Shown here in pieces: positions 1 to 63,744 of a stretch of DNA of 64,000 nt (position 1 is the first letter of the stretch; each line of letters starts with the position of its first letter). Under the pieces are notes generated by a model. That model saw only the letters and a program-made list of their open reading frames with translations. It was not told where the DNA came from and ran no database searches. The translations under genes were made by a program, and so were the position numbers. Source of the DNA: Dendrobates tinctorius (lineage: Eukaryota); contig NW_027361677.1 of the NCBI RefSeq assembly GCF_039654945.1, positions 19,964,001-20,028,000 of the forward strand, read 5' to 3'.

Positions 1-2366
1 CTGAGGTACCCTGACAGCAAGAGGAAGAGGAGATGACGTGGAGCCAGAGAACAAAACACTGAAGGAGCGGTCAGAGAGATAGGAAGAGAACCAGGAGAGT
101 GCAGTGTCCTTAATGCCTAGTGACTGGAGCCTAGAGAGTAGGAGATGGTGGTCAACAGTATCGAAAGCTGCAGATAGGTCAAGAAGAATGAGCAGAGAGT
201 GGTCACCATTACGTTTTGCTGTCAGAAGGTCATTGGTCACTTTGCTGAGTGCAGTTTCAGTCGAATGTAGGGGGCGGAAGCCGGACTGTGAAGGGTCTAG
301 AAGGGAGTGAATGGAGAGGTAACGGGTAAGGCGGGAGTAAACTAGGCGTTCCAAAAGTTTAGAGATGAAGGGGAGATTGGAGACTGGTCTGTAGTTGTTT
401 GTGCAGGATGGGTTGAGAGCAGGTTTCTTTAGTAATGGAGTAACGATGGCGTGTTTGAAGGAGGATGGGAAAATGCCCGAGGAGAGGGAGAGATTAAAGA
501 TTGTAGTTAGGTGGGTTGTGACGACTGGAGAGAGAGACTGGAGGAGATGTGAGGGAATGGGGTCGGTAGTGCATGTAGTCGGATGAGAAGAAGAGAGGAG
601 TCTGGAGACTTCTTCTTCTGTGATGGGATCAAATGTGGAGAGTGAGCCAGGGGAGATGTAGGAAGGGATGGGAGTCACAGCACTTGGTGGTTGGGAGCAG
701 ATTTCTTGACGGATATTATCTATTTTTTCTGTAAAGTGGGAGGCCAGGTCATCAGCACAAATGTCTGTGATAGGGGCTTGTGCTTTTGGCCTGAGGAGGG
801 AGTGAAAAGTGTCAAAAAGTTTCTTGGGGTTGTTGGCTAGTGAGGAGATCAGGGTGGTGAAGTAGGTCTGTTTGGCAAGGTGAAGGGCAGCGTTATAGGT
901 TCTTAACATAAATTTGAAGTGGATGAAGTCTTCTGGTGTGCGGGTTTTTCTCCATAGGCGTTCAGCACTCCTGGAGCATCGCTGGAGAAGTTGAGTTTGC
1001 GATGTGAGCCAGGGCTGTTTTACTCTGTGTTTGGAGGTTCTGAGGGTGAGGGGAGCTACTTGGTCAAGGGTGCTTCTAAGAGTGTCATTGTAGTGATGAA
1101 CAGCCAGATTAGGACAGGAAAGAGAGGAGATTGGGGACAGAGATGAGTGTAGGGAATCTGAAAGTGTCTGAGGGTTAATAGCTTGTAGATTTCTGACTGT
1201 GTGGTAGGTAGGAATGAGCTGGGGTGGGCGAGGATTTGTGAGCGTGAAGGAGAGAATGTTGTGGTCAGAGAGTGGAAGCGGTGAGTTGTTTAGGTGGGAG
1301 ATTGAACAGAGCCGGCAAAAGACCAGATCAAGGGTGTTACCATCCTTATGTGTCTCAGAGGTTGAAAGCTGTGAGAGGCCTAGAGAGGTGGTTAGTGATA
1401 GAAGCTGGGATGCAGATGTGGAATTAGGGCTGTTAATGGGGATGTTGAAGTCTCCCAGGATGAGGGTTGGTAGTTCTGAGGACATGAAGTGTGGCAGCCA
1501 GGCTGAAAAGTGGTCAAGGAAGTGGGTGGGTGAGCCTGGGGGCCGGTATATGACCGCTACCCTGAGGGAGAGGGGACGGAAGAGCCTGATGGTGTGGACC
1601 TCAAAAGAAGGGAATAAGAGTGATGGGACTGGGGGATGACCTGGAAAGTGCATTGTGGGGAAAGGAGTATGCCAACTCCACCACCAGGTCTGTTTGTGGG
1701 TCTCGGGGAGTGAGAGAATTGTAAGCCACCGTAGGAAATGGCAGCAGGAGAGACAGTGTCAGAATCCTGAATCCAGGTTTCAGTGAGGGCCAACAGATTA
1801 AGAGAGTTGTTCAGAAAGTAGTTGTGTAGGAAAGGAAGCTTGTTACAAGCAGACTGTGGATTCCAGAGGGCACAATTAAAAGATTGAGATGAGGGAGTGC
1901 AAGTAATGTTAATCAGATTATTGTGGTTTCGATATGAGGTAGGGTAGGGGTTGAGGTTGGGGGATGGTGGACCAGGGTTGGGGAAGATGTCCCCTGAAAT
2001 CAGTAGGAGAAGGAAGATAAAGAGCCAATAGTTGTTTGAATTGTAAGTAGTTTTTTTCTGCGATGTGTTTGGGCAAGATGGGCTGAGGTTTCTCAGGAAG
2101 GTGAGGAGTGCATGGGAGCTGTACATGGGAAAGGGAAGTATAGAGGGGCTGATGTGTATGAGTCGTGATGGAGGGGGGATGGGGTGGTGAATGTGGATGG
2201 CAAGGGAACACAGGAGGATAAAAATAAAGCACATGGTTAAAGGGGAAGGCAAAGTGTGGGTTACCTGACTCCTGCCCTGATTAACTGCCATGTATAACTG
2301 CCGTTTTGCTGGATGCTTATCTTCTGTGATGCTTTGCTTATGGGATGCTTGCGTGCTGTACCCCAC
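1..2366 (-). mobile_element. L2/CR1-group non-LTR retrotransposon ORF2 (APE endonuclease plus start of RT), frameshifted, continues past window start
   Basis: Minus-strand translation gives APE motifs ([62 protein letters not shown]) and RT motifs near 150-290 ([30 protein letters not shown]). A 1-nt frameshift lies near 1630 in a G-run. Confidence 0.92.
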
Positions 2367-2667
2367 ACTGCGTGCTTCCCCTTAGCAACTACTACAAATA
2401 TAGGCCACACTACAGGGTCAGGAGAGAGGGATTGTGGGAGATGGTTGGGTATAATTTGGCAGCTGGGGCCAGCACACCAGGGGATGGTTAGATGATCAAA
2501 GGCACTAGACCAAGATGTGGCAAAATGCTATAGCACCTTCCACCTGATAAGATCTAGAAAGGCCCCAGTCACAGATCTAAAGCAGTAAGTATTACATACA
2601 GTGCAACAAATGAATTATACCAAAGCTTTAGCAAGCACATTTAAATATGCAGCAAAATGGTAAAGCA

Positions 2668-4560
2668 TTAAAAACACATGTGACATGCACAATGTGAACA
2701 AGTCTGTTGGACCATGTTCACTCCACCCTGACTGAAACACAAACAAAAAGCACAGAATGACAAATGTGCAAAAATACCTTGCAATAAGACATATAACAGT
2801 AGTCAGCAAGTGCTGATAAAAGGTAATAACAAACACAGGGTATTTAGTCTATACGTTTTTTTGCAAAAAAATGTATACCAAGCTGCCTCACCAACGTCAA
2901 GGTAACCCGTATTGAAGCAGTCCCTATCTAATGTATTTAATACCTGAACATATGAACTGTGTCTAAATGAGCAGGATTAAGACAGGCGCTTTCTGGTATG
3001 GGCACGTGATGCAAGACAGCTCCTTATGTGCATGTCACACAAGAGAGGGGTGGGGTCTCTCAAATCATGCATAAGCATGAAAAAAACTGGATTAAAAACA
3101 CATGTGACATGCACAATGTGAACAAGTCTGTTGGACCATGTTCACTCCACCCTGACTGAAACACAAACAAAAAGCACAGAATGACAAATGTGCAAAAATA
3201 CCTTGCAATAAGACATATAACAGTAGTCAGCAAGTGCTGATAAAAGGTAATAACAAACACAGGGTATTTAGTCTATACGTTTTTTTGCAAAAAAATGTAT
3301 ACCAAGCTGCCTCACCAACGTCAAGGTAACCCGTATTGAAGCAGTCCCTATCTAATGTATTTAATACCTGAACATGCATGCATGATTTGAGAGACCCCAC
3401 CCCTCTCTTGTGTGACATGCACATAAGGAGCTGTCTTGCATCACGTGCCCATACCAGAAAGCGCCTGTCTTAATCCTGCTCATTTAGACACAGTTCATAT
3501 GTTCAGGTATTAAATACATTAGATAGGGACTGCTTCAATACGGGTTACCTTGACGTTGGTGAGGCAGCTTGGTATACATTTTTTTGCAAAAAAACGTATA
3601 GACTAAATACCCTGTGTTTGTTATTACCTTTTATCAGCACTTGCTGACTACTGTTATATGTCTTATTGCAAGGTATTTTTGCACATTTGTCATTCTGTGC
3701 TTTTTGTTTGTGTTTCAGTCAGGGTGGAGTGAACATGGTCCAACAGACTTGTTCACATTGTGCATGTCACATGTGTTTTTAATCCAGTTTTTTTCATGCT
3801 TATGCATGATTTGAGAGACCCCACCCCTCTCTTGTGTGACATGCACATAAGGAGCTGTCTTGCATCACGTGCCCATACCAGAAAGCGCCTGTCTTAATCC
3901 TGCTCATTTAGACACAGTTCATATGTTCAGGTATTAAATACATTAGATAGGGACTGCTTCAATACGGGTTACCTTGACGTTGGTGAGGCAGCTTGGTATA
4001 CATTTTTTTGCAAAAAAACGTATAGACTAAATACCCTGTGTTTGTTATTACCTTTTATCAGCACTTGCTGACTACTGTTATATGTCTTATTGCAAGGTAT
4101 TTTTGCACATTTGTCATTCTGTGCTTTTTGTTTGTGTTTCAGTCAGGGTGGAGTGAACATGGTCCAACAGACTTGTTCACATTGTGCATGTCACATGTGT
4201 TTTTAATCCAGTTTTTTTCATGCTTATGCATGATTTGAGAGACCCCACCCCTCTCTTGTGTGACATGCACATAAGGAGCTGTCTTGCATCACGTGCCCAT
4301 ACCAGAAAGCGCCTGTCTTAATCCTGCTCATTTAGACACAGTTCATATGTTCAGGTATTAAATACATTAGATAGGGACTGCTTCAATACGGGTTACCTTG
4401 ACGTTGGTGAGGCAGCTTGGTATACATTTTTTTGCAAAAAAACGTATAGACTAAATACCCTGTGTTTGTTATTACCTTTTATCAGCACTTGCTGACTACT
4501 GTTATATGTCTTATTGCAAGGTATTTTTGCACATTTGTCATTCTGTGCTTTTTGTTTGTG
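2668..4560. mobile_element. Non-coding retroposon-like insertion: about 1.7 copies plus about 2.8 inverted copies of a 424-bp monomer, with a 14-bp TSD
   Basis: Period of 424 bp (GAGACCCCAC at 3391, 3815, 4239). Inversion junction at about 3375-3378. AAAATGGTAAAGCA at 2654-2667 and 4561-4574. Confidence 0.85.
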
Positions 4561-4591
4561 AAAATGGTAAAGCAGCAGAAGTATGGAGTTG

Positions 4592-5284
4592 TACCATTTG
4601 GATATATTACAGCAGAGAATAGAGGCAGCAGAGGTGGGAAGTTGTATCATTCAGGCTGCTTGCTGGCAGTGAATGGAGTAAATACATGCAGGGTGGCTCA
4701 GTTGATTACCATTTGGATATATTACAGCAGAGAATAGAGGCAGCAGAGGTGGGAAGTTGTATCATTCAGGCTGCTTGCTGGCAGTGAATGGAGTAAATAC
4801 ATGCAGGGTGGCTCAGTTGATTACCATTTGGATATATTACAGCAGAGAATAGAGGCAGCAGAGGTGGGAAGTTGTATCATTCAGGCTGCTTGCTGGCAAT
4901 GAATGGAGTAAATACATGCAGGGTGGCTCAGTTGATTACCATTTGGATATATTACAGCAGAGAATAGAGGCAGCAGAGGTGGGAAGTTGTATCATTCAGG
5001 CTGCTTGCTGGCAGTGAATGGAGTAAATACATGCAGGGTGGCTCAGTTGATTACCATTTGGATATATTACAGCAGAGAATAGAGGCAGCAGAGGTGGGAA
5101 GTTGTATCATTCAGGCTGCTGCTGGCAGTGAATGGAGTAAATACATGCAGGGTGGCTCAGTTGATTACCATTTGGATATATTACAGCAGAGAATAGAGGC
5201 AGCAGAGGTGGGAAGTTGTATCATTCAGGCTGCTTGCTGGCAGTGAATGGAGTAAATACATGCAGGGTGGCTCAGTTGATTACC
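4592..5284. repeat. Tandem repeat, 6 x 115 bp; probably the 5' end of the L2 element
   Basis: TACCATTTGGATATATTACAGCAG... recurs at 4592, 4707, 4822, 4937, 5052 and 5166. Confidence 0.9.
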
Positions 5285-6760
5285 TGTCGTTCGTCACACT
5301 TACGGGCGACTAACGGGGGTCCCGCTGCCACCAAAACGCGACGGACAGCGGACCCTGTGTCACCACTATGTCACGGTCCCACCACTGACACGGGTGTATC
5401 AGCGGACGGAGGGACGAGACACAATGCCGGCACACGGCTATCACAGGCGCAGTTGGGGCTTATCTTAGTTATCCCACCAGTGGCACCATGTGACAAAAAT
5501 ATCCAGCAAGCTACTCTCGCTCTACAATTTGCCGCAGGGGGAGTTTAATTTGGATGCCCCACCACTGCTATCAATCTTCCAAGTACTGCGGGGATTTATG
5601 TATATCCCACTTTCTCAGTTCCACTTTGGAACTCGCAGCTCTCCGGCGCCCCCCTTACCCTCAGGTCAGTCAGGGAACTGCACCTAGGATAATTAGTCGC
5701 CGGACGGACTGCCTGTTGTGAACCGGCAATTGGGCTTCTGCAGTAAGGGAATTATCAATGCTGTGGCCGCAGCCCCTTATTCAGCAATATAAGACCCTTC
5801 TGTACTGCCAGCAAGCCGCAATAGCCATACACAACGCGCTGCCACCTGTCACGGTTACTTAATTCACAGTGTTAAATTAAGAGGGTCCGTGGCAAACCCC
5901 TTGAATTAGTAGCGATTATCTATCAAAGGCGTATAGTTCGATTCTTAGAGCATAGAGACAGAACTAAATAATTTTATCATTTATTTTCCGAAAGAGGACA
6001 GTGATTACAGATCAAAGTTGCTATAAAATTGAGACATAAAATATGTACATTAGACAAGTATAAAGCAAAGTGGATGAAAGAAGAAGGTACACTCACATTT
6101 AGTCAATTGTTGTTAGGCATCCCATGTGGCTTTAAGGGGGGTGGAGGCGGAGCTGCACGTCTCCACTCATCTGGGTTCTGCTCAGCACAAGGATTGGAGC
6201 TCTTCTGTCTGTCAATACATATTACCAAAGACATATCACACTCCAAATAAGGAGGGGTCTCATACATTACAAAATCCTCCTTCACCCTCTCAGATAAACC
6301 TTGTAAAACCTGGCTTTTCAACTCTGGGTCATTCTACTATGTACCTGTGGACCAGCGCCGAAACTCAGCACAGTAATCCTCTGCCGCTTGCTCGGTCCCC
6401 CTGGTGCAGAGAATGTATCTTAAACTTGGCCATTGATGCTCTGAGGATCATCATAGATGAGCCCGAGAGCCGAGAAAAATCTGTCCACTGTCAAAAAAGA
6501 CAGGTAATTAAACAGAGGAGTGGGGTCAAAGACGAAAATACAACTTACACGCTTCTCTGAAAGTAATAAACCAACCGCGCTCCCCCAAAAATCTCAAAGA
6601 GGAAGCTTGGGTTCCAGAGCAGATACATCTTGTGTATCAGACTGAGATCACTGCTGAATCTCCTCCTTTAATTCAGAGACCTGTAGAGACCAAGCCTGCA
6701 TTTGGCTCACAAGAGCCGTATCCTGTTCCATACTGAAGTGTAGGGAAAAGAATGGCCAGC
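5285..6760 (-). mobile_element. LTR-retroelement fragment (leader, PBS-like site and LTR); right boundary uncertain
   Basis: The minus strand reads ...CCGTGACA|GGTGGCAGCGCG at about 5847, like an LTR end followed by a TGGTGGCAGCG-type PBS. A second GCTGCCACCA lies at about 5323. No coding remnant recognised. Confidence 0.35.
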
Positions 6761-7577
6761 AGTAATGTCACGGTGTGACTACAGGATAGCAAATGTGTAC
6801 CTATACTGACCCTCGCTATAGCTGTCCCCAAGATTACCCCTGAAGGTTGGGATGCCTGGACCTCGTTCCTTACTATGCTCCTAAGTAGCACTAGTCGGTG
6901 CAGTGTATGGGGGGAATACAAACAAGACAGACAGGGCAAAACAGAAGCACCGTCAAACAGCACTCTCCCAGGGAAACATACAAAGGAATATAAATTGTAA
7001 AGCCTGAGAGGAAACAAAGCAATATAAAGATAACTAGGGAAAAGGAAAGGATTAACCAAACACAAACTTTTCAAATAACCACTAATAACCGGGATATGTC
7101 CACCTCTCCAGACCCAGATAGAGAAACTATTGGAGACATTAACTGAGCCAGTTTAAATTGAGAAAGAGCAGGCATGACTGGTTCTCTCACAGCATGTGCC
7201 CAAAGGCAAGTAATAACCTCAGCCCAGCGACTTAACTCTTACCTGCATAGGAGCTTCAGCTCTAAGACTCAATGCCCTAGTCACCAAGCGCTGATTATAA
7301 ATAGCAACTACATGGAGGCCCGATGCTATTGCATCGGGAGGGCGGTAATGTCACGATGGGGGCAGGCTTTACAGCATTGAGAATCTCTTGCCCCCCCCAT
7401 GTGCTCACCCACCTATTCACTCTCTTTCCCCATGTGCTGACTTCTCCCGTCTGTGCTCTCTTCTTTGACCTGTCTACCCCATGTGCTATCCCCCTTGTCT
7501 GCTGCCTGTGCTGTGTTCTCCCCTCATGTGCTGTCCCGTTTGAGCTGTCTCCCCCCTGTGCTCTGTCTCTCTCACCC

Positions 7578-7868
7578 CTGTGTCTGACCGTGCACTGAAC
7601 ATACCACAGCTCCTGGGCAGGGGAGGAAGCGAAAGACAATACTGACATTACAGCAGGCGATCGCAGAGGATACATTTTGTAAGGTAAAATATTGTTTAAA
7701 AACAGTCAGTGAAATATTTTACTGCACAAAATGAATCCTCTGTGATCCCCTGCTGTAATGTCAGTATTGTCTTTTGCTTCCTCCCCTACCCAGGAGATGT
7801 GATATGCTCCTTACACGGTCAGACACAGACAATTTTTTAAATGAACTTTCGTTCGTGGGAAAACCCCT
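7578..7868. mobile_element. Palindromic MITE (T2/Kolobok-like), left end degraded
   Basis: Long internal inverted repeat; ends ...AAACCCCT-TTAA; same family as 23379-23939. Confidence 0.6.
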
Positions 7869-10800
7869 TTAATGTGACCAGCTTCCTCTGCCTGTAGACA
7901 CGTCGCGCATCTGCCGCCGGGATCAGCTGAATGATTCACTGCACCTGCGCGGAATTTGCGCAGGCGCTAGTATAGACACTAGATGCTAACTGTGTGTATG
8001 ATGATGGATGTATGGACTTGCAAATGACTCATTATGATTCCCCTCCCTCTGATATTACGTATGTGGACAGGGAACTAGTGTTAGAGTCAGCGCCAGTCAG
8101 TGGCACGTTACAGGCCACGGTCTCCATCTTCACAGTGCTAGCGTCCGGCAGTGCGCCTGTCCGGGCATTGTCGTATTGTGGCTAGTTTAGTCGCCGCGCT
8201 GCAGTCAGCAGCAGTTGGGGCGTTCGCGGTAGCAACGCCGCACGCACGGTAGGTCAAGACGGACTTTGACCCAGAGTCTAGGGCCTAGTCCTGTGACCTT
8301 TTACCGTGTGCACACCGCCGAGTCCTGTGAGGTCGACAGGCTTCGGTATTCATGTTTATGTTTAAAGCGTTTCTGTGATTCAACAGAGTACGCTCCGCAC
8401 ACAATGGGTGACGTTCAACCCGCGTGCGTTATACCGCCATATAGCGCGTCTGCCATTAGCAAGCAGCGGTGTAACACCTACTGCACGGTGGACCCCGGGC
8501 GGCGAATACACTTATTTATTTATTTAGTGCGCTCCGCCATCCTTAACAGCTAAACTCTGTATTTCCAAAAAAAAATAAAAAATCCCTCCCGACGCATTTC
8601 TACCTCAATATCGAGGAGTTATCAGGTAAGTGTAGATGTTTGGGGGGGAAACCTAGTGGTCTGAAAGTAGGTGGTGATTTAGACTTGCGCCACATTGGGA
8701 ATATCACAATTTTATATATAATAATGAAAGTTATGTTTTAACATGCAATCTGTTTTTGCTGGTTGCTGACTATTTTCTGATAGATTTACAGTATATCTGA
8801 CAATACGGAACGGTTGTTTATTGCTGTAGCTCCTTAGATCGGATCTGCCTATTCTTTGCTCTCCACACACATCATTGACCCTTGGACACCCATGTCGTTG
8901 TCGCACGGTCACCATTTTACCTTCCTTGGTCTACTTTCGGTAAGCACTGACCACTAGATACCAAAAACACCCCACAAGAGCTGGAGTTTTGGAGTTGCTT
9001 TACCCATTCATTTTGACGTCATAGCTTCACTCTACCCAAAGAGCCTCAGTTCCTTTCGTTTGCCCATATCTCCTGCTTCAAGTACTGACTGTTCACTTGA
9101 TTCCTGACATTTCCGACCCTTTGACAAAATAATCAATGCCATCCGCTCTACCTGTAGTTTTATTGTAATTGAGGAGCACTGACGATTTGATGGCAGTTCC
9201 ATGTTTACGGCTGCTTTAGATATGACAAATGTTTGGCCAAAGTTAACGAGTAACCACTTTATTGTAAGTCCACGTGATGGTTCCATCATCAATGTTTTAT
9301 TACTGTATCATCTATGAGATAAAGTGATAATTATAATCTGTCAGTGGTATAGTCACCGCTTCTCATCTATCAACAGAACACTCAAGAAGAATATGATTTC
9401 AAAGAGTTTCTCCATGCAAAGGGCCACAGACAGAAGAAGACCCCTGGGAAAGAACAATATAGGTGCTGTTTGCTGTACAATAGTACCTCATAACGCACAA
9501 TTCCATATGTTTTGGAGATCGTAGTGACCCCCTTAGCTCCTGGGCCCTTGTGAGGCTGCACAAGTTGTACCAATCATATGTCGGCCCCTGAAGAGGCCAT
9601 TAGTGGTCCTCTAACACTACGTACAGGTGCCAGAGTCAGCAAGCAATGTCTGATAATAATGATGTCTTTGTACTCCTGTAAATCATCCTACAATCCATCC
9701 CACAGGTTGGGGTCTTGTAGAGTTTGCCAGCCACTGATTACAGAACAAAGAAAATCTTTTAGCCTTTTCGAAATCAAGAAAATCAGAAAATAAACACAAA
9801 AACTTGATTTAAATACTAGGTTGTCTTCTGGAGATACATTAATTTTGACCCATTAATGACCAGATTGGACTATCAATCTAATTCTCCATTGCATATACAC
9901 ATTAGGGGCACCTTTCTACAAAGCCAAATAATCCTACCAGGAAGATGGCAGCTACTCAACAGTCAGTTTTCTTTTTCTCGTGAAGTGATGCCTTGGAATT
10001 TTCCAGAGACTATCTTGACTGTGTCAAGTTATAGTCATAAAAGCATGAATTGCTTTTTTGGTTCCAAGAGAAACATTGTGACATAGAGAAATGTTCTGTT
10101 TATGTTCAGCCTGAGAACAATCTCCACTCATGTCGTCGCGTAAAGTCAAGTTAATTTAGACTTTGTGTCTATTCTTCTTCTCAAGATTTAGTTCACACAT
10201 GGCATATTTTTGCAGAAATGTGTGCGTCTATGCCATTTTTGCAAACATAGTTTGCACAAATCTACATGCTTGTAAATAAACTACCCTGTTCAGATGAGCA
10301 AACCTGATATCCAAACTTCTGAATCAAATCATCCATGTGTGAATTCCCTTGAAATTATGGATGTGGTAGGTGGAGGATGATCCTTTAAATATAATGTAGG
10401 ATATTGTGACCCTTGTGGAAGGACAGAATCGCTCACATGGAGCCATGAACTTGGTGGTTACAATATTACAGAAGGCGACGCGCTTGATGGTTTCAACAAT
10501 CCCAAAAGAGACAGGGGGTTGACTTTGGACACTTTGCTGACTTTTCTGAAAATGACACTTGTTGCTCATCCTCCTGAAGTTTGGTGTGATAGTAGGTGAC
10601 CCATTGGGCACGCAGGGCGGTACAATGTGCCTTTCACTTGATATGTAAGGTTATGTGCCCACAGAGTTTTTTTGAAAAGTTTTTAGAGCAGAAACTGAGC
10701 GGAAACTGTCCAGAATCTTCTAAAAAATTTGGAGTTTCTGCTCCAAAAAAGATGTTTCACGCACATACCCTTAAAAAAGGGGTTTCCTGAGATTTTATAG

Positions 10801-18127: not shown

Positions 18128-21100
18128 GTAAGTGTTGCCCAAGGTTATAGGTAGACCTGATGTAGCAGTGTTATTTCTATCCATAGCCTTGTTGCACTAT
18201 TAATTGCTGAATGAGTTAACTGTGAGATCCCGTCAGTAAGCCCGCTCTGAAGGTCTTACGGGACAGTTTTGAGATATTTTGTATGTCTTTTTCTGAGCTC
18301 TCCTTAGCTGATTTATGAGCATGTAGAGCTGTAAGAGCAAAATTTCTGATGAAACTCAATTGCAAAAATGATTTTTAGCCCCCAAACATATGAATTTGTG
18401 CAATGAAAAAAATCCTCAAAGGTGGAAAATCCCTTTAATGATCAAAAGGAACCCCTCCTGTTAAAGAGGATCTCCACCTTGGAAAATCCTGACACGTTAG
18501 GGTATTTTGAGAATAAACTGATAATAAATTGTCTCCGTGTCAAGACCCCCGCCGATCACTGTGAGGAAACCCAATAGTAGGAGTTATATTTCCCAGCAGC
18601 ACCACCCACAGGAAAAATAAAGCATTTCATTGTGCTCATCTTAATCAGTGGACTGTCTGTCCAGAGAAAGAGACACTTTTGAAGCACTCTGGTCAAAAAA
18701 TGGGCATCCTGAACAGGTGACCCCTATATTAAAGGGGTTCTCCACTAAAATACTGCACTTTACTAATGGTCCCATGGTGATTCTCACCTATCATATTCCC
18801 ACTGTTCCTCTGCACCGCTGGCTGTGTCCTTCTCTGTTCTATTTGCTTCCTCTTGCTGCGGTGGATCCCGTATGACCACTGCAGCCAATAAGTGGCCATT
18901 GATTGGCTGCAGCCTTGAGCTGGGAAACTGTGTCCTATAGCTGACATGGGATGTTACCGCTGCAGTCAATGACTGCTTACTAGCAGGAAGCAAAGAGAAT
19001 GGCAGGGAAAACGTCCAGCGGTGTCCAGGAACAACGTGGCCATTGTAGGTCAGTATATGTTATTTTTTTCTTTTTTCGACCATCATCAGCCCATTAACCC
19101 CTTTGTCTGAATTCCCTGATGGAAATGGCTTTCATAAATCGGACCACTCATTTACGTAATAATAAATCCCCTGTCTTCTCTCCATAGGCACAATGATCTG
19201 CCCTGGCAGCTACTGATTGCATACAATAACCAGCTGAGTAAGGTGAACCTTAGTACGCTGAGTACTACTCACACCAACATTCCTAAACTACGAGAGGGAA
19301 AAGTTGGGGGACAGGTGAGTGCGCAGAGACCCAACTATATATGGGAAATTATCACTAAAAAAAAAAATTGTATTATTTTGGTAATTAATATGTAAGGCTG
19401 GTTTCACACTTGCGTTTTTTTGCGCTGTATTTTAGCACTAAAAAACGCATGCGCTTTTTCCCCCCTATATTTTGCATGGGATGCGCTTATGTGCGCATAC
19501 ACATGCGTTTGTATGCGTTTTTACGCACATGCGTTTTTTGTGGTGTGCGCTCAGGCACACAAAATGCATCCTGTTGCATTTTTTGGGCGTCCGACTTGCC
19601 TCAAAAAAACGCATGCGTGCGCAATGCGTTTTTTTTACAGCAAGACACCCATTATAAGTCTATGGGTGCGCATATGTGAGCATTAGCATGCTTATGTATG
19701 CGTTTTTTTGCACATGCGTTTTTTTGTTGACCATTGGTTAGACAATGGAAATTAGGGGTTTGGGTTAGAGTTAGGGTTAGTTAAGGGGGTTTAGGGATAG
19801 GGTTTGGGTTAGGGTTAGTATGGTTTGGTTAAGGGTTAGGGTTTAGGGTTAGTTAGGGTTTAGGGTTAGGGTTTGGGTTAGTAGGGTTTGGTTAAGGGTT
19901 AGGGTATGGTTTGGTTAAGGGTTAGGGTTAGTAAAGTCATGGTTAGGGTTAGTAAAGTCATGGTTTGGGTTAGTGTGAGGGGCCAACTAATGTTGGAAAA
20001 AAACGCAAACGCGGTAAAAACGCATAAAAACGCTGCGTTTTTTTCATGCATGCTCATAAAAATGCTTGAAAAAAACGCAGCGTTTGTATGCGTTTTTTCC
20101 ATGCGTTTTTTTGCGGGAAAAACGCGCTGCAAAACAAAGCAAGTGTGAAAGTAGCCTAACCTAAAACTTTTCCAAACTTGTGGCAACAGCTTATTAAGTA
20201 ACCAAATCCTTCATTTCTTTGCCAACTTCCAGCCTAGACTGACGCAATACAACCAAATCTGCTTATTCACTAGTACAAAGGGAACGATTTATTATTCTGA
20301 GCCCATATTATCTTCGACATAAAATTTACGTAAAAATTTACGTAAATTTTTTGCACAATTGGTTGCAAATTTTCACATCTAGTTTTAGGCCTATGAATTT
20401 ACTATTTGTGCCTTATTCAAAAGGGTGCTTGGCTTGTATTATGGCAAAAACTCTTTAAAAAAAAATCCATCGTGACATCTCATATTTCTTGGCAGAGAGT
20501 AGTCTGTTTTCAACCATTGCAAACAAGTACTCGCAAGTTTATTCTGCGTATATGTGGATCTTAAAGGAGTTTTAACATGCTGATAAAAGAAGCCAGAAAT
20601 CCACTCCCTGCACCAGCGCTGCCACTTCACAAGTGGGCGAAAGTGGTAACGTCATCAACACCAGACACCTGCCTGCTGCGGCCAGTGATTGACTGCAGGG
20701 TCAGGAAACTGGTGGTTGGTCGAGATGTCATGGTGGAAATCTTGGGAGCGGATTAATGGGGTGGGTATGGCTCCTTTACTTTTTTTTTTATCTGGATGGT
20801 TTCCAGAAGTTTTTTTCTTTTTTTAAAATATAAAACTTTGCATTAAAAAAGTTTTAGAAGAAGTTAAAGATGCTATAAGTAAAGGAAACCTAGATTAGTA
20901 ATCCTCGCCTACGGGCAGTGGCTACACATCATTTTTATTATTCTTTTATCATGTAAATTTGCTTTCTTATATTTTCATCCGGTACTTTATTTGTACGTAG
21001 TTCTGGGCCGCCTACGTTCCCTGTGATACTCAAGGCAAAGATGCTGTTAGAAGGACCTTGGAGCAGATAGATGTCATCCATCGGATGTGCCAAAAGTATC

Positions 21101-24100
21101 CCGATGACTTCCTGTGCGTAACCACTGCCGGAGGTGAGGACTGATGGGTGGTGGATTAGGAGGGATGCCGCAAGGGTAGAAGTAAAGTCAAGGAGCTTGG
21201 ATATGTTTTCTAGTACAGAAAGGCCCAGGAATATGTTACAGTGGGGAAAAAAAGTATTTAGTCAGTCAGCAATAGTGCAAGTTCCACCACTTAAAAGGAT
21301 GAGAGGCATCTGTAATTTACATCATAGGTAGACCTCAACTATGGGAGACAAACTGAGAAAAAAAAATCCAGAAAATCACATTGTCTGTTTTTTTTTTCAT
21401 TTTATTTGCATATTATGGTGGAAAATAAGTATTTGGTCAGAAACAAAATTTCATCTCAATACTTTGTGATATATCCTTTGTTGGCAATGACAGAGGTCAA
21501 ACGTTTTCTGTAAGTCTTCACAAGGTTGCCACACACTGTTGTTGGTATGTTGGCCCATTCCTCCATGCAGATCTCCTCTAGAGCAGTGATGTTTTTGGCT
21601 TTTCGCTTGGCAACACGGACTTTCAACTCCCTCCAAAGGTTTTCTATAGGGTTGAGATCTGGAGACTGGCTAGGCCACTCCAGGACCTTGAAATGCTTCT
21701 TACAAAGCCACTCCTTCGTTGCCCTGGCGGTGTGCTTTGGATCATTGTCATGTTGAAAGAGCCAGCCACGTTTCATCTTCAATGCCCTTGCTGATGGAAG
21801 GTTTGCACTCAAAATCTCACGATACATGGCCCCATTCATTCTTTCATGTACCCGGATCAGTCGTCCTGGCCCCTTTGCAGAGAAACAGCCCCAAAGCATG
21901 ATGTTTCCACCACCATGCTTTACAGTAGGTATGGTGTTTGATGGATGCATCTCAGTATTCTTTTTCCTCCAAACACGACAAGTTGTGTTTCTACCAAACA
22001 GTTCCAGTTTGGTTTCATCAGACCATAGGACATTCTCCCAAAACTCCTCTGGATCATCCAAATGCTCTCTAGCAAACTTCAGACGGGCCCGGACATGTAC
22101 AGGCTTAAGCAGTGGGACACGTCTGGCACTGCAGGATCTGAGTCCATGGTGGCGTAGTGTGTTACTTATGGTAGGCCTTGTTACATTGGTACCAGCTCTC
22201 TGCAGTTCATTCACTAGGTCCCCCCGCGTGGTTCTGGGATTTTTGCTCACCGTTCTTGTGATCATTCTGACCCCACGGGGTGGGATTTTGCGTGGAGCAC
22301 CAGATCGAGGGAGATTATCAGTGGTCTTGTATGTCTTCCATTTTCTAATTATTGCTCCCACAGTTGATTTCTTCACTCCAAGCTGGTTGACTATTGCAGA
22401 TTCAGTCTTCCCAGCCTGGTGCAGGGCTACAATTTTGTTTCTGGTGTCCTTTGACAGCTCTTTGGTCTTCACCATAGTGGAGTTTGGAGTCAGACTGTTT
22501 GAGGGTGTGCACAGGTGTCTTTTTATACTGATAACAAGTTTAAACAGGTGCCATTACTACAGGTAATGAGTGGAGGAAAGAGGAGACTCTTAAAGAAGAA
22601 GTTACAGGTCTGTGAGAGCCAGAAATCTTGATTGCTTGTTTCTGACCAAATACTTATTTTCCACCATAATATGCAAATAAAATGAAAAAAAAACAGACAA
22701 TGTGATTTTCTGGATTTTTTTTTCTCAGTTTGTCTCCCATAGTTGAGGTCTACCTATGATGTAAATTACAGACGCCTCTCATCTTTTTAAGTGGTGGAAC
22801 TTGCACTATTGCTGACTGACTAAATACTTTTTTCCCCACTGTATAAGATGATTCAGGACCAGGCCGATAATTGGCTGCAGCAGTCATAGAACATTGTTTG
22901 TTTTTTTTTATCACCGGGGAACATAGTTGTTGAATTCCTCATACAGGGATTGCTGAAGCTATCCGGACTAAGAAGGTGGCCAGTCTGATTGGCGTGGAGG
23001 GTGGACACTCCATCGACAGCAGCTTGGCAGTACTGCGGACCTTTTACCACCTCGGGGTGCGATATATGACCTTGTCTCACAGCTGTAACGCCCCATGGTA
23101 AGATCCGTCACCACAGTTGGAATGATAGGATTATGCTTTTATTTGCTTTGACTGCCAACAAGGGGGCATCAGATAAGTTTCTCCATGACGCTGGCGCCAA
23201 AATCATCATTTTGTACTAGTGGTGATGGGATTATACCTCTCACGTAGCAAATCCTATGTGGGGATCAGAGGCAACGGCAAAGCTGCAAGGGGTACAAATG
23301 TCAGAGATCTGCCAAAGGCTCTGGTAGTCAACGACCCAAAGGGAATCAATAGCAATGGCACCAGTTAGTGAGCATAAAAGGGGTTGTGCCACAAAGTGTA
23401 TTTTAATTAATAGATCTTGGAATAATAATTATTTCCACAATTGGATGTGTTAAGAAAAAATGTTCCTGTGCTGAGATAATCTTATAAATGTTCCCCTGCT
23501 GTGTACTGTGTAATAGCTGTGTCTGCAGGAACATGGTCGGATATACCATATATCCTGGGCAGGGGAGGACACAAAAGAGAATATACAGACATTAAAGCAG
23601 AGGGATCACAGCTGATTCTTTTTCTCAGGTAAAACATTTCCTTGCCTGTTTTTAAGCAATGTTTTGCATCAAAGAAAGAAATAATCAGCTGTGATCCCTC
23701 TGCTGTAATGTCTGTATACTCTTTTGCTCCCCCCCCTTCCCAGGAGCTGTGGTGTGATCAGACCATGTTCCTGCAGACACAGCCATTACACAGTACACAG
23801 CAGGGGAACATTTATAAGATTATCTCAGCACAGGAACATTTTTTTTTTAAACACATCCAATTGTGGAAGTTATTACTATTCCAAGATCTATTGATTAAAA
23901 CATTTATTAAAATTAACTTTGTGCTTGGGAAAAAACCCTTTAAGTCCAAATAACTTAAAGCTCTTGGACGCTGTTCATGGAATCGCGGGTATTAAATATG
24001 CTTTAATATAGATTATACCTCTTGGTTTCTTAACAGGGTGGATAACTGGCTAGTGGATACAAATAAAGATCCAGCTAAAAGCAACGGCTTGTCTGAATTT

Positions 24101-33754: not shown

Positions 33755-34960
33755 GCAAAAAGGAAGGAAAAATCAAAAAATAAAGAGTGCGCCCTGTGTG
33801 CACGTCCGTTACCGGAATCTTACACAAAAAGGCTATGCAAAAAATGCATTAATGAGACGGCAAAACAGGCATCAGCCGTAGACATAAGGGCCATAATTAG
33901 GGAAGAGCTACAGGCCCTAAACCAGAGCAGGCCTTCTAATATCGAAACTACCAAACCAGCGGTTGTAGACACCGATGAAGGCGAAGTAGTCTCAGATAGT
34001 TCCAACGCATCCACATCAGCATCCTCCTCAGAGATGGAGGGCCGCTGCTGTTTTCCTTTAGATCACATGGATAATCTAGTCAAATCCGTGAGGAATACAA
34101 TGGGATGCACGGACACAAAGGAGCCGCAGACGACTCAAGAAATCATGTTTGCAGGTCTGACGGACAAAAAGAGGAGAGTTTTTCCAGTTATTCCAGCAAT
34201 AAAAGCGCTGGTTAAGAAAGAATGGGAGAGACAGGACCAGAGAGGGTATCTTCCCTCAACCTCAAAAAGAAGGTACCCCTTCGACGACGAAGAGTTGTCG
34301 ACATGGGGTAAGGTCCCAAAGGTAGATGCGGCAGTGGCCTCCGCCTCAAAGCAAACGGTCTTACCAGTGGAGGACACGGGCATTTTAAAAGACCCGCTTG
34401 ACCGCAAAGCTGACGCCTCTTTGAAGAGGGCATGGGAAGCAGCTACCGGCACATCTAAACTGGCAATAGCTAGTACCTGCACAGCTCGTTCTATGCTGGT
34501 CTGGATCGATCAACTGGACCAGCAAATAGACCAGAAGATCCCTAGAGACAAACTACGAGCCACCATACCACTAATCCGCGGTGCAGCAGCATATATAGCG
34601 GATGCTTCGGCTGATTCCTTACGTATGGCAGCCAGAACAGCGGGGTTGGCTAATAACGCCAGGCGTAGCCTGTGGCTTAAAAGCTGGAGAGGTGACACTC
34701 AGTCCAAAGCAAAACTGTGTACCATTCCTTGCGAGGGTGAGTTCTTATTTGGAAGAGCCTTAGATGAAATCCTTACGAAGGCAAAAGAAAGGAAAAAAGG
34801 ATTCCCTAACCCTCCTCTCCCATTTTATAGGAGGGCGTTTAGGAGAAGACCCTTCGGCCGGGGAAGATCAGCGGAGAATCAAAACCGCTGGGCCACAAAG
34901 GAAGGAAAAGGCAAAGGTGCCATCTTTAGGGGATCCTCCTTCCGCAGGGACAGGAACTGA
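33755..34960 (+). CDS. DIRS gag-like ORF (CxxC...CxxC knuckle plus LAP2alpha-C-like domain)
   Basis: Open frame from 33755: ECALCARPLPESYTKRLCKKC, then PKVDAAVA...KDPLDRK...RRSLWLKSW...GEFLFG. Confidence 0.85.
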   Translation, partial: AKRKEKSKNKECALCARPLPESYTKRLCKKCINETAKQASAVDIRAIIREELQALNQSRPSNIETTKPAVVDTDEGEVVSDSSNASTSASSSEMEGRCCFPLDHMDNLVKSVRNTMGCTDTKEPQTTQEIMFAGLTDKKRRVFPVIPAIKALVKKEWERQDQRGYLPSTSKRRYPFDDEELSTWGKVPKVDAAVASASKQTVLPVEDTGILKDPLDRKADASLKRAWEAATGTSKLAIASTCTARSMLVWIDQLDQQIDQKIPRDKLRATIPLIRGAAAYIADASADSLRMAARTAGLANNARRSLWLKSWRGDTQSKAKLCTIPCEGEFLFGRALDEILTKAKERKKGFPNPPLPFYRRAFRRRPFGRGRSAENQNRWATKEGKGKGAIFRGSSFRRDRN

Positions 34961-36854
34961 GGAGCCGGTCCCTCCAGTAGGAGGGAGACTAAAAAAATTT
35001 TTCCGAGAATGGGAGAAAATTACAGCTAGCCCTTGGGTCCTAGGCATTATCAAGGACGGGTTAAAAATAAGATTCCATCATGTACACCGTAATTCTTTGA
35101 TCATAACATCCTTCAGCTCACCAATCCAACAGCAGGCCCTGGAAGCTGAGATTCGGAATTTACTGGACAAAAAAGTTTTGGTCCATGTGCCTAAGGGGCA
35201 AGAAGGGAGAGGATTTTACTCCCCTCTCTTTCTGATATCTAAACCAGACGGATCGTTCCGGACAATAATCAACCTGAAAAAATTAAATTCATTCATAATA
35301 AATCATAAATTTAAGATGGAATCCATAAGATCCACGATTAAGCTCCTCTTCCCCAATTGTATGATGGCAGGCTTGGATCTGAAGGATGCTTATTATCATA
35401 TTCCCATCCATTCCAGATATCAGAAATACCTCAGAGTGGCGGTCCTTCTCGATGGCAAGATACAGCATCTCCAGTTCACAGCCATGCCATTCGGCATTTC
35501 CATCGCACCACGAGTATTTACAAAGGTGATGCTGGAAGTGATGGCTTTTTTACGCCAGAAGGACACACTAATAGTACCCTATCTGGATGATTTTCTGATA
35601 GTGGGAAATTCATCTCGACAATGTAGTGATCGAGTTGCTGATACAATCTTGTCCTTACAGGCCCTAGGGTGGATAATAAACTTCAAAAAGTCCAGAATCG
35701 AGCCGCAGTCTGTTCAGTCTTTCCTGGGTCTCGAGCTAGATTCCTTAAGCCAAAGGTGTCTGCTGTCGCAGGTAAAAATCTCAGCAATTAAAAAGGTTAA
35801 GATGGCGATACGTCGGCCACACATGTCTTTAAGGGAAGCAATGTCCCTTCTGGGATCCCTTACTGCCTGCATCCCGGCAGTTCAGTGGGCCCAGTTCCAC
35901 ACGAGGACGCTACAATACCAAATTCTTTTAGAGGAGTCCCGTGACCGAGGGAATCTGACAAAGAAAATCACGCTGTCCCAGGAGGTCCTAACCTCCCTTG
36001 CGTGGTGGCTAAAGGACGATAACCTAACGGCGGGAGTACCTTGGGTTATAACACCCTCCCGTATAATTATCACGGACGCTAGCCCCACAGGATGGGGAGC
36101 CTATATGGGGAATAACTTTGCCCAAGGCCTATGGGATATAGGTGAAGATAAGGATTCGTCAAATTTAAAAGAGCTAAAGGCAGTTTATCATGCATTATTT
36201 CATTTTCTTCCACAGTTACAAGGGGAGGACATGAGAATCCTTTCGGACAACACCACCGTAGTCGCTTATCTGAACAGACAAGGCGGAACTCGATTGGTCA
36301 CCTTAATGTCTTCCGCAAGAAGAATTTTATCCCTAGCAGAAGAACATTTGTTGTCTCTCTCAGCCCTCCACATAAGGGGAAGAGACAACGTGGAGGCAGA
36401 TTTCCTAAGCCGCCATACACTGCGGCAAGGGGAGTGGTGTCTAAACCGGGGAATATTCACACACATCGTGTCGCTTTGGGGTCTTCCCCAAATAGACCTC
36501 TTCGCCACCAGAAAAAACAGGCAAGTGAAGAGGTTCGCCTCTTCAAATGTGTCAGACAGTCCGGAAATTCTGGATGCCCTCCAGGCCCCGTGGCAATTCA
36601 AACTGGCATATGCGTTCCCACCAATCATACTACTACCGCAGGTGATCAGGAAAATCAGAGCAGAGGAAGCACGAATAATCCTAATACCACCATTCTGGCC
36701 CAGGAGGCCGTGGTTTTCATACCTGCAAGCGATGTCAGTAACAGATCCGTGGGTGCTTCCCTCAACCCCCAGGCTCCTCTCACAGGGACCTTTTTTCCAT
36801 CCTCAAGTGGGCAGTCTCCACTTGACTGCCTGGAACTTGAAAGGGAAATGTTGA
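34764..36854 (+). CDS. DIRS pol: reverse transcriptase, RNase H and methyltransferase-like domain; uninterrupted
   Basis: VGGRL, GFYSPLFL, DLKDAYYHIPI, MPFGISIAPRVFTK, YLDD, TDASPTGWGA, SDNTTVVAYLNRQGGT, IDLFA, YAFPP. Confidence 0.93.
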   Translation: MKSLRRQKKGKKDSLTLLSHFIGGRLGEDPSAGEDQRRIKTAGPQRKEKAKVPSLGDPPSAGTGTEEPVPPVGGRLKKFFREWEKITASPWVLGIIKDGLKIRFHHVHRNSLIITSFSSPIQQQALEAEIRNLLDKKVLVHVPKGQEGRGFYSPLFLISKPDGSFRTIINLKKLNSFIINHKFKMESIRSTIKLLFPNCMMAGLDLKDAYYHIPIHSRYQKYLRVAVLLDGKIQHLQFTAMPFGISIAPRVFTKVMLEVMAFLRQKDTLIVPYLDDFLIVGNSSRQCSDRVADTILSLQALGWIINFKKSRIEPQSVQSFLGLELDSLSQRCLLSQVKISAIKKVKMAIRRPHMSLREAMSLLGSLTACIPAVQWAQFHTRTLQYQILLEESRDRGNLTKKITLSQEVLTSLAWWLKDDNLTAGVPWVITPSRIIITDASPTGWGAYMGNNFAQGLWDIGEDKDSSNLKELKAVYHALFHFLPQLQGEDMRILSDNTTVVAYLNRQGGTRLVTLMSSARRILSLAEEHLLSLSALHIRGRDNVEADFLSRHTLRQGEWCLNRGIFTHIVSLWGLPQIDLFATRKNRQVKRFASSNVSDSPEILDALQAPWQFKLAYAFPPIILLPQVIRKIRAEEARIILIPPFWPRRPWFSYLQAMSVTDPWVLPSTPRLLSQGPFFHPQVGSLHLTAWNLKGKC

Positions 36855-45701: not shown

Positions 45702-52394
<6,693 letters not shown>

Positions 52395-54455: not shown

Positions 54456-62481
<8,026 letters not shown>

Positions 62482-63037: not shown

Positions 63038-63625
63038 TCCTATAGGCTGCACACGGGGCACTCCCTATAGACTGCACACGGGATACTCCCTATAGACTTC
63101 ACACGGGATACTCCCTATAGACTGCACGCGGGGCACTCCCTATAGACTGCACGCGGGGCGCTCCCTATAGACTGCACACGGGGCGCTCCCTATAGACTGC
63201 ACACGGGGTGCTCCCTATAGACTGCACACGGGGCGCTCCCTATAGACTGCACACGGGATACTCCCTATAGACTGCACACGGGGCACTCCCTATAGACTGC
63301 ACACGGGATACTCCCTATAGACTGCACACGGGGCGCTCCCTATAGACTGCACACGGGGCGCTCCCTATAGACTGCACACGGGGCGCTCCCTATAGACTGC
63401 ACACGGGGCGCTCCCTATAGACTGCACACGGGGCGCTCCCTATAAACTGCACGCGGGGCGCTCCCTATAGGCTGCACGCGGGGCGCTCCCTATAGGCTGC
63501 ACGCGGGGCGCTCCCTATAGGCTGCACACGGGACGCTCCCTGTAGACTGCACGTGGGACGCTCCCTATAGGTTGCACGTGGGACGCGCTCTATAGGCTGC
63601 ACGCGAGACGCTCCCTATAGACTGC
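63038..63625. repeat. 25-bp VNTR (about 23 copies) in CDK10 intron 12
   Basis: Unit CTCCCTATAGACTGCACACGGGGCG. Confidence 0.95.
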
Positions 63626-63744
63626 ATTCGGCGGACCCTCACTCTATAGTCTCCTTCCATCCAGCACGTTATCTCTGCCCCATGATTTTATCTTGAGCTT
63701 CTCCAGAGTAAAACACTTTGTTGTAGGCTGGTCCTGCATCCAGG

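What the first reader, a model, noticed from the sequence alone, without database searches (positions are those of the whole stretch)
2668..4560. TSD-flanked tandem and inverted array of a structured, non-coding 424-nt monomer: candidate retrozyme-like element without a recognisable ribozyme
Seen: a 1.9-kb insert made only of near-identical 424-bp monomers, about 1.7 copies in one orientation and then about 2.8 in the other. They join at a CATGCATGCATG palindrome and are bounded by a 14-bp direct repeat (AAAATGGTAAAGCA). Both ends fall mid-monomer. The monomer is packed with stems: TGTGACATGCACA / TGTGCATGTCACA (13-bp long-range complement), GTGAACA..TGTTCAC, GAGAG..CTCTC, TGTCT..AGACA, TATAC-ATTTTTTT-GC-AAAAAAA-CGTATA, and a G-U-rich hairpin GGGTTACCTT-GACGTTGGT-GAGGCAGCTT that pairs well only in the right-arm (+) sense. 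Known: animal retrozymes and Penelope pLTR arrays are TSD-flanked multimers of structured monomers that normally contain a hammerhead and derive from circular or multimeric RNA. Inference: this is a non-autonomous retroelement copied from a circular or multimeric RNA. I find no CUGAnGA...GAAA core on either strand, so it may use another or undescribed self-cleaving motif. This is the best candidate for something new in the window.
Basis: partly seen in the sequence, partly recalled or inferred. Interest (0 to 1): 0.75.

Follow-up and report, generated by a model that had tools for sequence, protein, structure and literature searches.

The report
Tandem-inverted retro-insert without a ribozyme
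A very young 1.9-kb insertion in a poison-frog genome consists of identical copies of a 424-base non-coding unit; its layout matches insertions made by Penelope-type jumping genes, but it has no self-cutting RNA motif, and nothing shows a new one.

Summary
Window 2668-4560 is a 1,893-bp insert made only of a 424-bp unit. It has 1.67 copies in minus sense, 2 untemplated bases (GC), then 2.79 copies in plus sense. All copies are 100% identical, and a perfect 14-bp target-site duplication bounds the insert. The two arms lie head-to-head, so any target-primed model needs the T-rich (+) strand as the RNA template. There is no poly(A) and at most 1 base of primer-template homology. The junction is a (CATG)3 palindrome.

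This matches published Penelope-like element (PLE) insertion: partial tandem, inverted 5'-truncated copy, palindromic junction, both strands nicked and extended, and internal, non-homologous RT starts. An L1-style twin-priming event on a poly(A)-less RNA is the main rival.

No hammerhead core and no Rfam ribozyme were found on either strand. There is no ORF. Folding is only moderately better than shuffles, and on both strands.

Earlier unchecked notes of this scan list similar inserts elsewhere in this genome, with and without hammerheads.

Verdict: a real, probably PLE-mediated retro-insert of a circular or multimeric RNA. The 'new ribozyme' idea is unsupported.

The parts
2654..2667 (.). Left copy of the 14-bp target-site duplication AAAATGGTAAAGCA. 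Its last A could also be templated by monomer position 406 (1-nt ambiguity).
2668..3375 (-). Left arm: 708 bp, 1.67 monomers, the reverse complement of monomer positions 122 to 405. The (+)-sense 3' end faces the left flank. This is the inverted, 5'-truncated 'head'.
3376..3377 (.). Two bases (GC) templated by neither arm. They are filler at the head-to-head joint.
3373..3384 (.). (CATG)3 palindrome across the joint. Both cDNAs ended at an AUG of the template, so both 3' ends read ...CAT.
3378..4560 (+). Right arm: 1,183 bp, 2.79 monomers, positions 1 to 335 after two full turns. The (+)-sense 3' end faces the right flank.
3378..3801 (+). Reference monomer: 424 nt, 39.6% G+C, T-rich in this sense. 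The longest stop-free stretch is 70 codons. There is no hammerhead core and no Rfam match.
3411..3423 (+). 13-nt TGTGACATGCACA. It pairs with 3759-3771 (TGTGCATGTCACA), and this long-range stem closes about 335 nt in both strands' folds.
3573..3600 (.). 28-nt near-palindrome TATAC-A/T7-GC-A7-CGTATA, once per monomer.
3729..3756 (+). Stem-loop GTGAACA...TGTTCAC (monomer 352-379) with an AC-rich loop. It lies between the two inferred RT start sites (monomer 335 and 405).
4561..4574 (.). Right copy of the 14-bp target-site duplication.

Best explanation
This is a very recent insertion made by reverse transcription, most likely by a Penelope-like element (RT plus GIY-YIG endonuclease) acting in trans on a 424-nt-periodic non-coding RNA.

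Shown: the target was cut with a 14-bp stagger. Each arm has its (+)-sense 3' end at an outer boundary and its 5' end at the centre. The copies are identical. There is no poly(A) and at most 1 nt of primer-template homology.

Inferred: both nicked target strands served as primers on the same T-rich (+) RNA. One cDNA started at monomer position 335 and ran 2.79 units. The other started at position 405 and ran 1.67 units. The two cDNA 3' ends (both ...CAT) were joined with 2 extra bases.

The template was either a 424-nt circle copied by rolling-circle reverse transcription or a multimeric transcript of a perfectly homogeneous tandem source. The sequence alone cannot separate these. The unit has no ribozyme, and none is needed for this mechanism.
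For: Architecture: (tandem plus inverted head-to-head arms, 14-bp TSD, 2-nt filler, palindromic joint, different mid-monomer outer ends, 0 mismatches in 1,467 redundant positions).

Published PLE hallmarks match:
- Partial tandems with an adjacent inverted 5'-truncated copy and an optional tail (PMC8557442).
- Palindromes at the inverted junction, head-to-head as the usual form, TSDs of 8-10 bp, and trans-mobilisation of unrelated sequence (PMC3846280).
- A purified vertebrate PLE protein nicks and extends BOTH strands, starts RT internally at sites not homologous to the target, prefers AT-rich targets, and does not need hammerhead cleavage (PMC11167929).

The target here is 66% A+T. The 70-nt offset between the two outer ends resembles the PLE 'tail', and it brackets a stem-loop with an AC-rich loop.

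The left outer end (405) lies 19 nt upstream, modulo 424, of the right arm's inner end (position 1). This fits two polymerases on one template; the chance of a gap of 19 nt or less either way is about 0.09.

All seven amphibians sampled by Li et al. have PLEs and small tandem PLE dependants averaging 316 bp (bioRxiv 10.64898/2026.07.22.740005). Unchecked notes of this scan report bona fide PLE palindromes with 14-bp TSDs and hammerhead retrozymes with the same layout in this genome.
Against: No PLE sequence, hammerhead or RT/GIY-YIG ORF lies in or near the insert, or anywhere in the 64-kb window. How a PLE protein would recognise this RNA is unknown, and the Anolis enzyme needs a motif from its own ORF.

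The 70-nt offset is longer than the published 30-40-bp tail. The RT start regions are GU-rich in template sense, whereas the Anolis start site is AC-rich. The 14-bp TSD starting AAAA (bottom-strand nick TTTT/G) and the inversion with a small internal gap fit L1 twin priming just as well.

Only one locus was seen. There are no reads, no transcript and no second copy, so both the enzyme assignment and the RNA intermediate are inferred from anatomy.
Confidence: 0.55

Rival explanations
1. L1-type (APE-endonuclease LINE) twin priming on a poly(A)-less circular or multimeric RNA. This would be a frog counterpart of the mammalian circRNA-derived pseudogenes.
For: The TSD is 14 bp, the mean for L1 twin-priming loci (7-20 bp, PMC2837659), and human L1 gives 15-bp TSDs (PMC4245944 abstract). 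The TSD begins AAAA, so the first nick would be 5'-TTTT/G, close to the L1 TTTT/A preference. The layout of two inverted fragments of one RNA within one TSD, with a 19-nt internal gap, is the definition of twin priming. CircRNA-derived pseudogenes have few or no 3' A residues (PMC4897178).
Against: There is no poly(A). The T-rich primer has no complementarity to the RNA at the start site (UUUCAG follows position 335), although an A7 run exists at positions 211-217 and was not used. I found no L1 precedent for a retrocopy holding several full tandem units in both arms. PLE insertions routinely look like this.
Confidence: 0.17
2. A genuine propagating family: a hammerhead-less 'retrozyme' whose 424-nt RNA is circularised by an unknown ribozyme, by back-splicing or by a tRNA-ligase route, and is regularly mobilised by PLEs.
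For: The unit size, low G+C (39.6%), non-coding nature, tandem layout, long TSD and above-random folding all match animal retrozymes (PMC7229834). Perfect identity of 4.46 units favours one small template read repeatedly. An unchecked note reports a 415-nt hammerhead-less unit retroposed as a 5.4-mer in the same genome, and its follow-up called that repeat very abundant.
Against: The defining hammerhead is absent, and no other Rfam self-cleaver scores even at E<=10. The structure signal is equal or stronger on the non-template strand, with only about 60% of bases paired. No second copy, transcript or relative was found by any route that worked, though none of those routes can see frog DNA. This reading overlaps the best explanation and adds only untested claims.
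Confidence: 0.12
3. DNA-level event: a small extrachromosomal DNA circle (microDNA size), amplified by rolling-circle replication with a strand switch, captured at a staggered double-strand break.
For: The 424-bp size lies just above the 200-400-bp range of microDNA circles (my own knowledge). Identical concatemers with an orientation switch are typical rolling-circle products. There is no poly(A) and no RT signature in the sequence itself.
Against: End-joining capture does not normally give a clean 14-bp TSD. The strictly head-to-head polarity, the near-adjacent start and stop positions (19-nt gap) and the match to PLE biochemistry are not predicted by this model. Similar inserts in this genome are reported to carry hammerheads, which are RNA-level elements (unchecked).
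Confidence: 0.07
4. Assembly artefact: a mis-joined or chimeric long-read consensus created the inverted arm or inflated the copy number.
For: PLE-type tandem/inverted structures are known to trouble assemblies (PMC8557442). Perfect identity of the copies makes copy number hard to assemble. I could not inspect reads.
Against: A perfect 14-bp TSD lies exactly at both edges. The flanks are compositionally continuous. The arms are asymmetric with a 2-nt filler, not a mirror-image chimera. At most the copy numbers could be wrong, not the insertion or the inversion.
Confidence: 0.04

Closest known systems
Penelope-like element insertions (Poseidon/Neptune clades of vertebrates) and sequences they mobilise in trans
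   Same: Partial tandem, adjacent inverted 5'-truncated copy head-to-head, palindrome at the inverted joint, TSD, unequal outer ends ('tail'), RT start internal and non-homologous to the target, priming from both strands (PMC8557442, PMC3846280, PMC11167929).
   Different: No RT/GIY-YIG ORF, no pLTR similarity shown, no hammerhead. The offset between the outer ends is 70 nt rather than 30-40. The whole insert consists of one 424-nt unit.
Animal non-LTR retrozymes (Cervera and de la Pena 2020; Li et al. 2026 preprint)
   Same: Small (51-972 bp, amphibian mean 316 bp) non-coding tandem units, G+C below 50%, TSDs longer than 4 bp, thought to be copied as multimers from circular RNA by PLE enzymes.
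   Different: The type I hammerhead that defines and names the class is absent on both strands. Expression as circular RNA and family status are unknown.
L1 twin-priming insertions and circRNA-derived pseudogenes
   Same: [quoted passage not shown] A head-to-tail (non-colinear) junction and lack of a poly(A) tail, as in circRNA-derived pseudogenes (PMC2837659, PMC4897178).
   Different: No poly(A) or A-rich priming site was used. There are several full turns in each arm. No parent gene or exon content is recognisable.
Non-autonomous Chlamys/Naiad PLE derivatives (for example MRC1 of Chlamydomonas)
   Same: PLE dependants that lack canonical hammerheads yet give pLTRs and multicopy head-to-tail insertions (PMC8557442).
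   Different: Those clades were not found in any vertebrate sampled by Li et al. (Naiad only in the coral). Those elements also share 3' sequence with an autonomous partner, which could not be checked here.

Membership tests
Animal non-LTR retrozyme | Type I hammerhead ribozyme in each monomer | tested here: not met
   No CUGANGA on either strand of the circularised monomer. The 1-mismatch sites lack G8 or a helix II. No Rfam hammerhead family scores at E<=10 over 2400-5400 or at E<=1 over the window.
Animal non-LTR retrozyme | Short non-coding tandem unit, G+C below 50%, TSD longer than 4 bp | tested here: met
   424 bp, 39.6% G+C, longest stop-free stretch 70 codons, 14-bp TSD.
Animal non-LTR retrozyme | Expressed as linear and circular RNA of unit length | not testable with these tools
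Animal non-LTR retrozyme | Dispersed multi-copy family related to a PLE pLTR | not testable with these tools
   No frog genome or repeat library is searchable. The unit is unique within the window. The protein-word, exact-ORF, k-mer and earlier-findings look-ups were blank but cannot see frog DNA.
PLE-type insertion architecture | Partial tandem plus adjacent inverted 5'-truncated copy, head-to-head, inside one TSD | tested here: met
   2.79 direct and 1.67 inverted units, (+)-sense 3' ends outward, 14-bp TSD.
PLE-type insertion architecture | Palindrome at the inverted junction | tested here: met
   (CATG)3 at 3373-3384.
PLE-type insertion architecture | 30-40-bp 'tail' at one end, the sequence between two RT start sites | tested here: inconclusive
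   The outer ends are at monomer 335 and 405, so one arm carries 70 extra nt. This is longer than published tails, and with a single locus recurrence cannot be judged.
PLE-type insertion architecture | RT start not homologous to the cleaved target; AT-rich target | tested here: met
   0 and 1 nt of possible pairing at the two ends. The target is 66% A+T over 44 bp.
Autonomous Penelope-like element | ORF with telomerase-like RT and GIY-YIG endonuclease | tested here: not met
   No ORF over 91 aa overlaps the insert. The only RT in the window belongs to a DIRS-like element about 30 kb away.
L1 twin-priming retrocopy | 3' poly(A) annealed to a T-rich nick | tested here: not met
   The right arm ends ...GTTTGTG directly at the TSD. 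The template continues UUUCAG.
L1 twin-priming retrocopy | 7-20-bp TSD, TTTT/A-like first nick, inverted fragment with small internal deletion | tested here: met
   14-bp TSD, inferred nick TTTT/G, 19-nt gap modulo 424.
circRNA-derived pseudogene | Non-colinear junction of exons of an identifiable parent gene | not testable with these tools
   A head-to-tail junction is present, but no parent locus can be searched. There is no coding frame. A GTGAGG...polyY-CAG pair on the (+) strand (182/341) is no more than expected in T-rich sequence.
Viroid-like / delta-like circular RNA agent | Self-cleaving ribozyme(s) and rod-like or highly paired fold | tested here: not met
   No ribozyme. About 60% of bases paired and a branched fold. 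No match in viral or metagenome collections.

The most novel reading that the evidence does not exclude
The 424-nt unit is a propagating circular-RNA retroelement without a hammerhead. It would be circularised by an undescribed self-cleaving motif or by a host pathway (back-splicing or tRNA ligase) and copied by rolling-circle reverse transcription by PLE enzymes. That would be a new, ribozyme-independent branch of the retrozyme lifestyle in vertebrates.

A milder version is also not excluded: it is a single-copy host RNA that became tandem only during retroposition. That would show that PLE tandem arrays arise at the RT step.
Probability: 0.12. Interest if true: 0.75.

Novelty: new variant of a known kind. 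Interest (0 to 1): 0.4.

Why it matters
How Penelope-like elements and their dependants acquire tandem/inverted structure is still unresolved. The candidates are rolling-circle copying of circular RNA, multimeric transcripts of tandem masters, and template jumping.

An insert with the full PLE signature but no hammerhead and no PLE sequence separates the integration mechanism from the ribozyme. It agrees with the in-vitro finding that hammerhead cleavage is dispensable.

One genome-wide search would be informative. If the unit has a non-tandem parent, tandemisation must happen during reverse transcription. If instead it is one more satellite-like PLE dependant, the locus is an ordinary young insertion, useful mainly as a clean, undecayed example of both-strand priming.

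Tried and rejected
Expression, circular junction reads, insertion polymorphism and raw-read support for the inversion remain untested.

2. Relatives. All of these were blank, and none holds frog genomic DNA, so the blanks say nothing about copy number:
- word search with the longest monomer ORF (its length filter would also hide long proteins)
- exact look-up of ten ORFs in and around the insert
- two k-mers each in viral and metagenome collections
- earlier-findings look-ups by sequence and by relatives

3. Known ribozymes and RNAs: Rfam over the region at E<=10, and over the window at gathering score and at E<=1, plus a regex for the hammerhead core with one mismatch. Nothing was found.

4. 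Coding origin: no frame stays open beyond 70 codons. The putative 264-nt 'exon' left by a GTGAGG...CAG pair is closed in all frames. I rejected it as evidence for an exon-intron circle.

5. Simple snap-back hairpin: rejected, because the inner ends of the arms are at different monomer positions (122 and 1).

6. (-) strand as template: rejected for any target-primed model, because it would put the 5' ends outward.

7. Adjacency to a PLE: none in the window.

8. The large HMMER search, structure prediction and complex prediction were not used, because there is no credible protein.

Full report
**What is there**

Window 2668-4560 is a 1,893-bp block built only from one 424-bp unit. Tandem Repeats Finder reports period 424, 2.8 copies and 100% matches at 3378-4560. 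The repeat finder shows further direct copies at 2667-3375, inverted arms of up to 709 nt at 100% complementarity, and a 14-bp direct repeat, AAAATGGTAAAGCA, at 2654-2667 and 4561-4574.

I set monomer position 1 at window 3378 for exact mapping:
- The right arm reads positions 1 to 335 after two full turns (2.79 units, + sense).
- The left arm is the reverse complement of positions 122 to 405 (1.67 units). The last base of the left TSD could also be position 406.
- Bases 3376-3377 (GC) belong to neither arm.
- Across 1,467 redundant positions there is not one mismatch. The insertion is therefore very young, and the template units differed by less than about 0.2%.
- The unit occurs nowhere else in the 64-kb window.
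- The flanks on both sides share a strong G>C skew that the A+T-richer insert interrupts.

**What the unit is not**

It has no hammerhead. CUGANGA is absent from both strands of the circularised unit, and the three one-mismatch sites lack essential core bases or a helix II. Rfam 15 gives nothing for any ribozyme or other family, either at E<=10 over 2400-5400 or at E<=1 and gathering score over the whole window.

It is not coding. The longest stop-free stretch is 70 codons, of T-rich nonsense.

It folds better than dinucleotide shuffles, but only moderately and on both strands:
- Linear folds: z = -2.5 (+) and -3.6 (-).
- Circular folds: z = -2.5 and -3.3, with about 60% of bases paired in a branched shape.

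This is what DNA-level inverted repeats give (a 13-nt long-range pair and a 28-nt palindrome). It is not a rod-like viroid fold. One small G-U hairpin is better in the (+) sense, at -7.1 against -3.4 kcal/mol.

**Polarity and mechanism**

The right arm is (+) on the top strand and the left arm is (+) on the bottom strand. So the (+)-sense 3' ends face outward and the 5' ends meet in the middle. In target-primed reverse transcription the cDNA is covalently continuous with the nicked target strand. Only a (+) RNA template gives this head-to-head layout. A (-) template would give tail-to-tail.

The two inferred RT start points are positions 335 (right) and 405 (left). The primers had 0 and 1 nt of possible pairing with the RNA at those points. 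No poly(A) is present, although an A7 run was available elsewhere in the unit.

The right-hand cDNA stopped at position 1. That is 19 nt downstream, modulo 424, of where the left-hand cDNA started, as if one polymerase ran into the other on the same template. The chance of a gap of 19 nt or less in either direction is about 0.09.

Both cDNAs ended opposite an AUG, so both 3' ends read ...CAT. They were joined with two extra bases, which creates the (CATG)3 palindrome. A simple snap-back is excluded, because the arms are not mirror images at the joint.

**Which enzyme**

The anatomy matches what is published for Penelope-like elements:
- Insertions are partial tandems, often with an inverted 5'-truncated copy at the 5' end and a short tail at one end (PMC8557442).
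- Inverted junctions commonly carry palindromes, head-to-head is the usual form, and unrelated sequences can be mobilised in trans with TSDs of 8-10 bp (PMC3846280).
- A purified Anolis PLE protein nicks and extends both strands, unlike R2 or L1. It starts reverse transcription at two internal sites that are not homologous to the target, prefers AT-rich DNA, and does not need hammerhead cleavage (PMC11167929).

The target here is 66% A+T. The two start sites lie 70 nt apart and bracket a stem-loop with an AC-rich loop. That is only a loose parallel to the Anolis start site and tail.

Li et al. found PLEs and small tandem PLE dependants in all seven amphibians they sampled (bioRxiv 10.64898/2026.07.22.740005).

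Earlier notes of this scan identify the genome as a poison frog's. They list, on other pieces of it, PLE palindromes with 14-bp TSDs and hammerhead retrozymes with inverted heads and 11-13-bp TSDs. They also list two hammerhead-less cases: a 415-nt unit and a 494-nt exon-plus-intron unit. I could not check these notes, so I use them only as leads. They did shift my preference from L1 towards PLE.

**Main rival**

The main rival is L1-style twin priming. The 14-bp TSD equals the L1 average. The TSD starts AAAA, which implies a TTTT/G first nick. 'Two inverted fragments of one RNA with an internal deletion inside one TSD' is the definition of twin priming (PMC2837659). CircRNA-derived pseudogenes without poly(A) tails are known in mammals (PMC4897178). 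Against this rival are the missing poly(A), the lack of any primer annealing, and the several full units in each arm.

**Circle or multimer**

The perfect identity of 4.46 units and the two different mid-unit start points fit a 424-nt circle read repeatedly. They fit equally well a multimeric transcript from a perfectly homogeneous tandem master, which is how the Anolis study pictures PLE RNA. The sequence cannot decide between them. I put roughly even odds on the two.

**What could not be done**

No collection open to me contains frog DNA. The protein-word search, exact-ORF look-up, k-mer scans and earlier-findings look-ups were all blank. These blanks carry no weight for copy number. The following all remain open:
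- whether the unit is a family
- whether it is transcribed or circular
- whether it is related to a PLE terminal repeat
- whether raw reads confirm the inversion

**Verdict**

The feature is real. It is best read as a recent retro-insertion primed from both target strands, with the Penelope signature (about 0.55 for PLE specifically, and about 0.8 for target-primed reverse transcription of a (+) periodic RNA by some enzyme). It resembles an animal retrozyme in everything but the defining hammerhead, so it should not be filed as one.

The suggestion of a new self-cleaving motif has no support, and the mechanism does not need one. The locus is interesting mainly as an undecayed example that separates PLE-type integration from the ribozyme. 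A single genome-wide search could make it informative about how PLE tandem arrays arise.

Noticed in passing
window 4592-5284: A 115-bp unit repeated 6 times at 99% identity starts 18 bp after the right TSD. The insert sits at the edge of this array. An earlier unchecked note reports 116-bp tandem monomers at the 5' ends of L2 elements in this genome, but no LINE ORF follows here (no Pfam hit in ORFs at 5200-10600).
   Followed up: partly
window 1-2400 and 4400-5200: Both flanks of the insert have a strong G-over-C skew on the + strand (0.3-0.58). This suggests one compositionally distinct block that the insertion split.
   Followed up: no
monomer positions 335/336 and 405/406 (e.g. window 3712/3713 and 3782/3783): Both inferred RT start points lie immediately 5' of a YCAG (UUUCAG and UCCAG) and just 3' of a U5-containing GU-rich run. 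With one locus this may be coincidence.
   Followed up: partly
window 19756-19974: An interstitial, degenerate vertebrate telomere repeat, (TTAGGG)n, of about 200 bp.
   Followed up: no
window 21456-22475 (-): An uninterrupted 339-aa Tc1/Sleeping-Beauty-type transposase ORF (HTH_Tnp_Tc3_2, HTH_SB and DDE_3 domains). It is possibly a young copy.
   Followed up: partly
window 34034-36854 (+): A DIRS-like element. Its 308-aa gag-region ORF matches the Pfam LAP2alpha domain (E = 5e-22) and is followed by an RT/RNase H ORF. This fits the reported origin of the mammalian LAP2alpha domain from a DIRS gag (from my own knowledge).
   Followed up: partly
window 50604-51907, 54916-56654, 58740-59363, 63039-63626: Four long GC-rich minisatellites: 68 bp x19, 34 bp x53, 26 bp x24 and 25 bp x23.5. 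They account for the long spurious ORFs in that part of the window.
   Followed up: no
window 23572-23726: A roughly 150-nt hairpin that scores below the gathering threshold against plant miRNA models (MIR393, MIR529) on both strands. It is most likely a MITE-type palindrome, not a miRNA gene.
   Followed up: no
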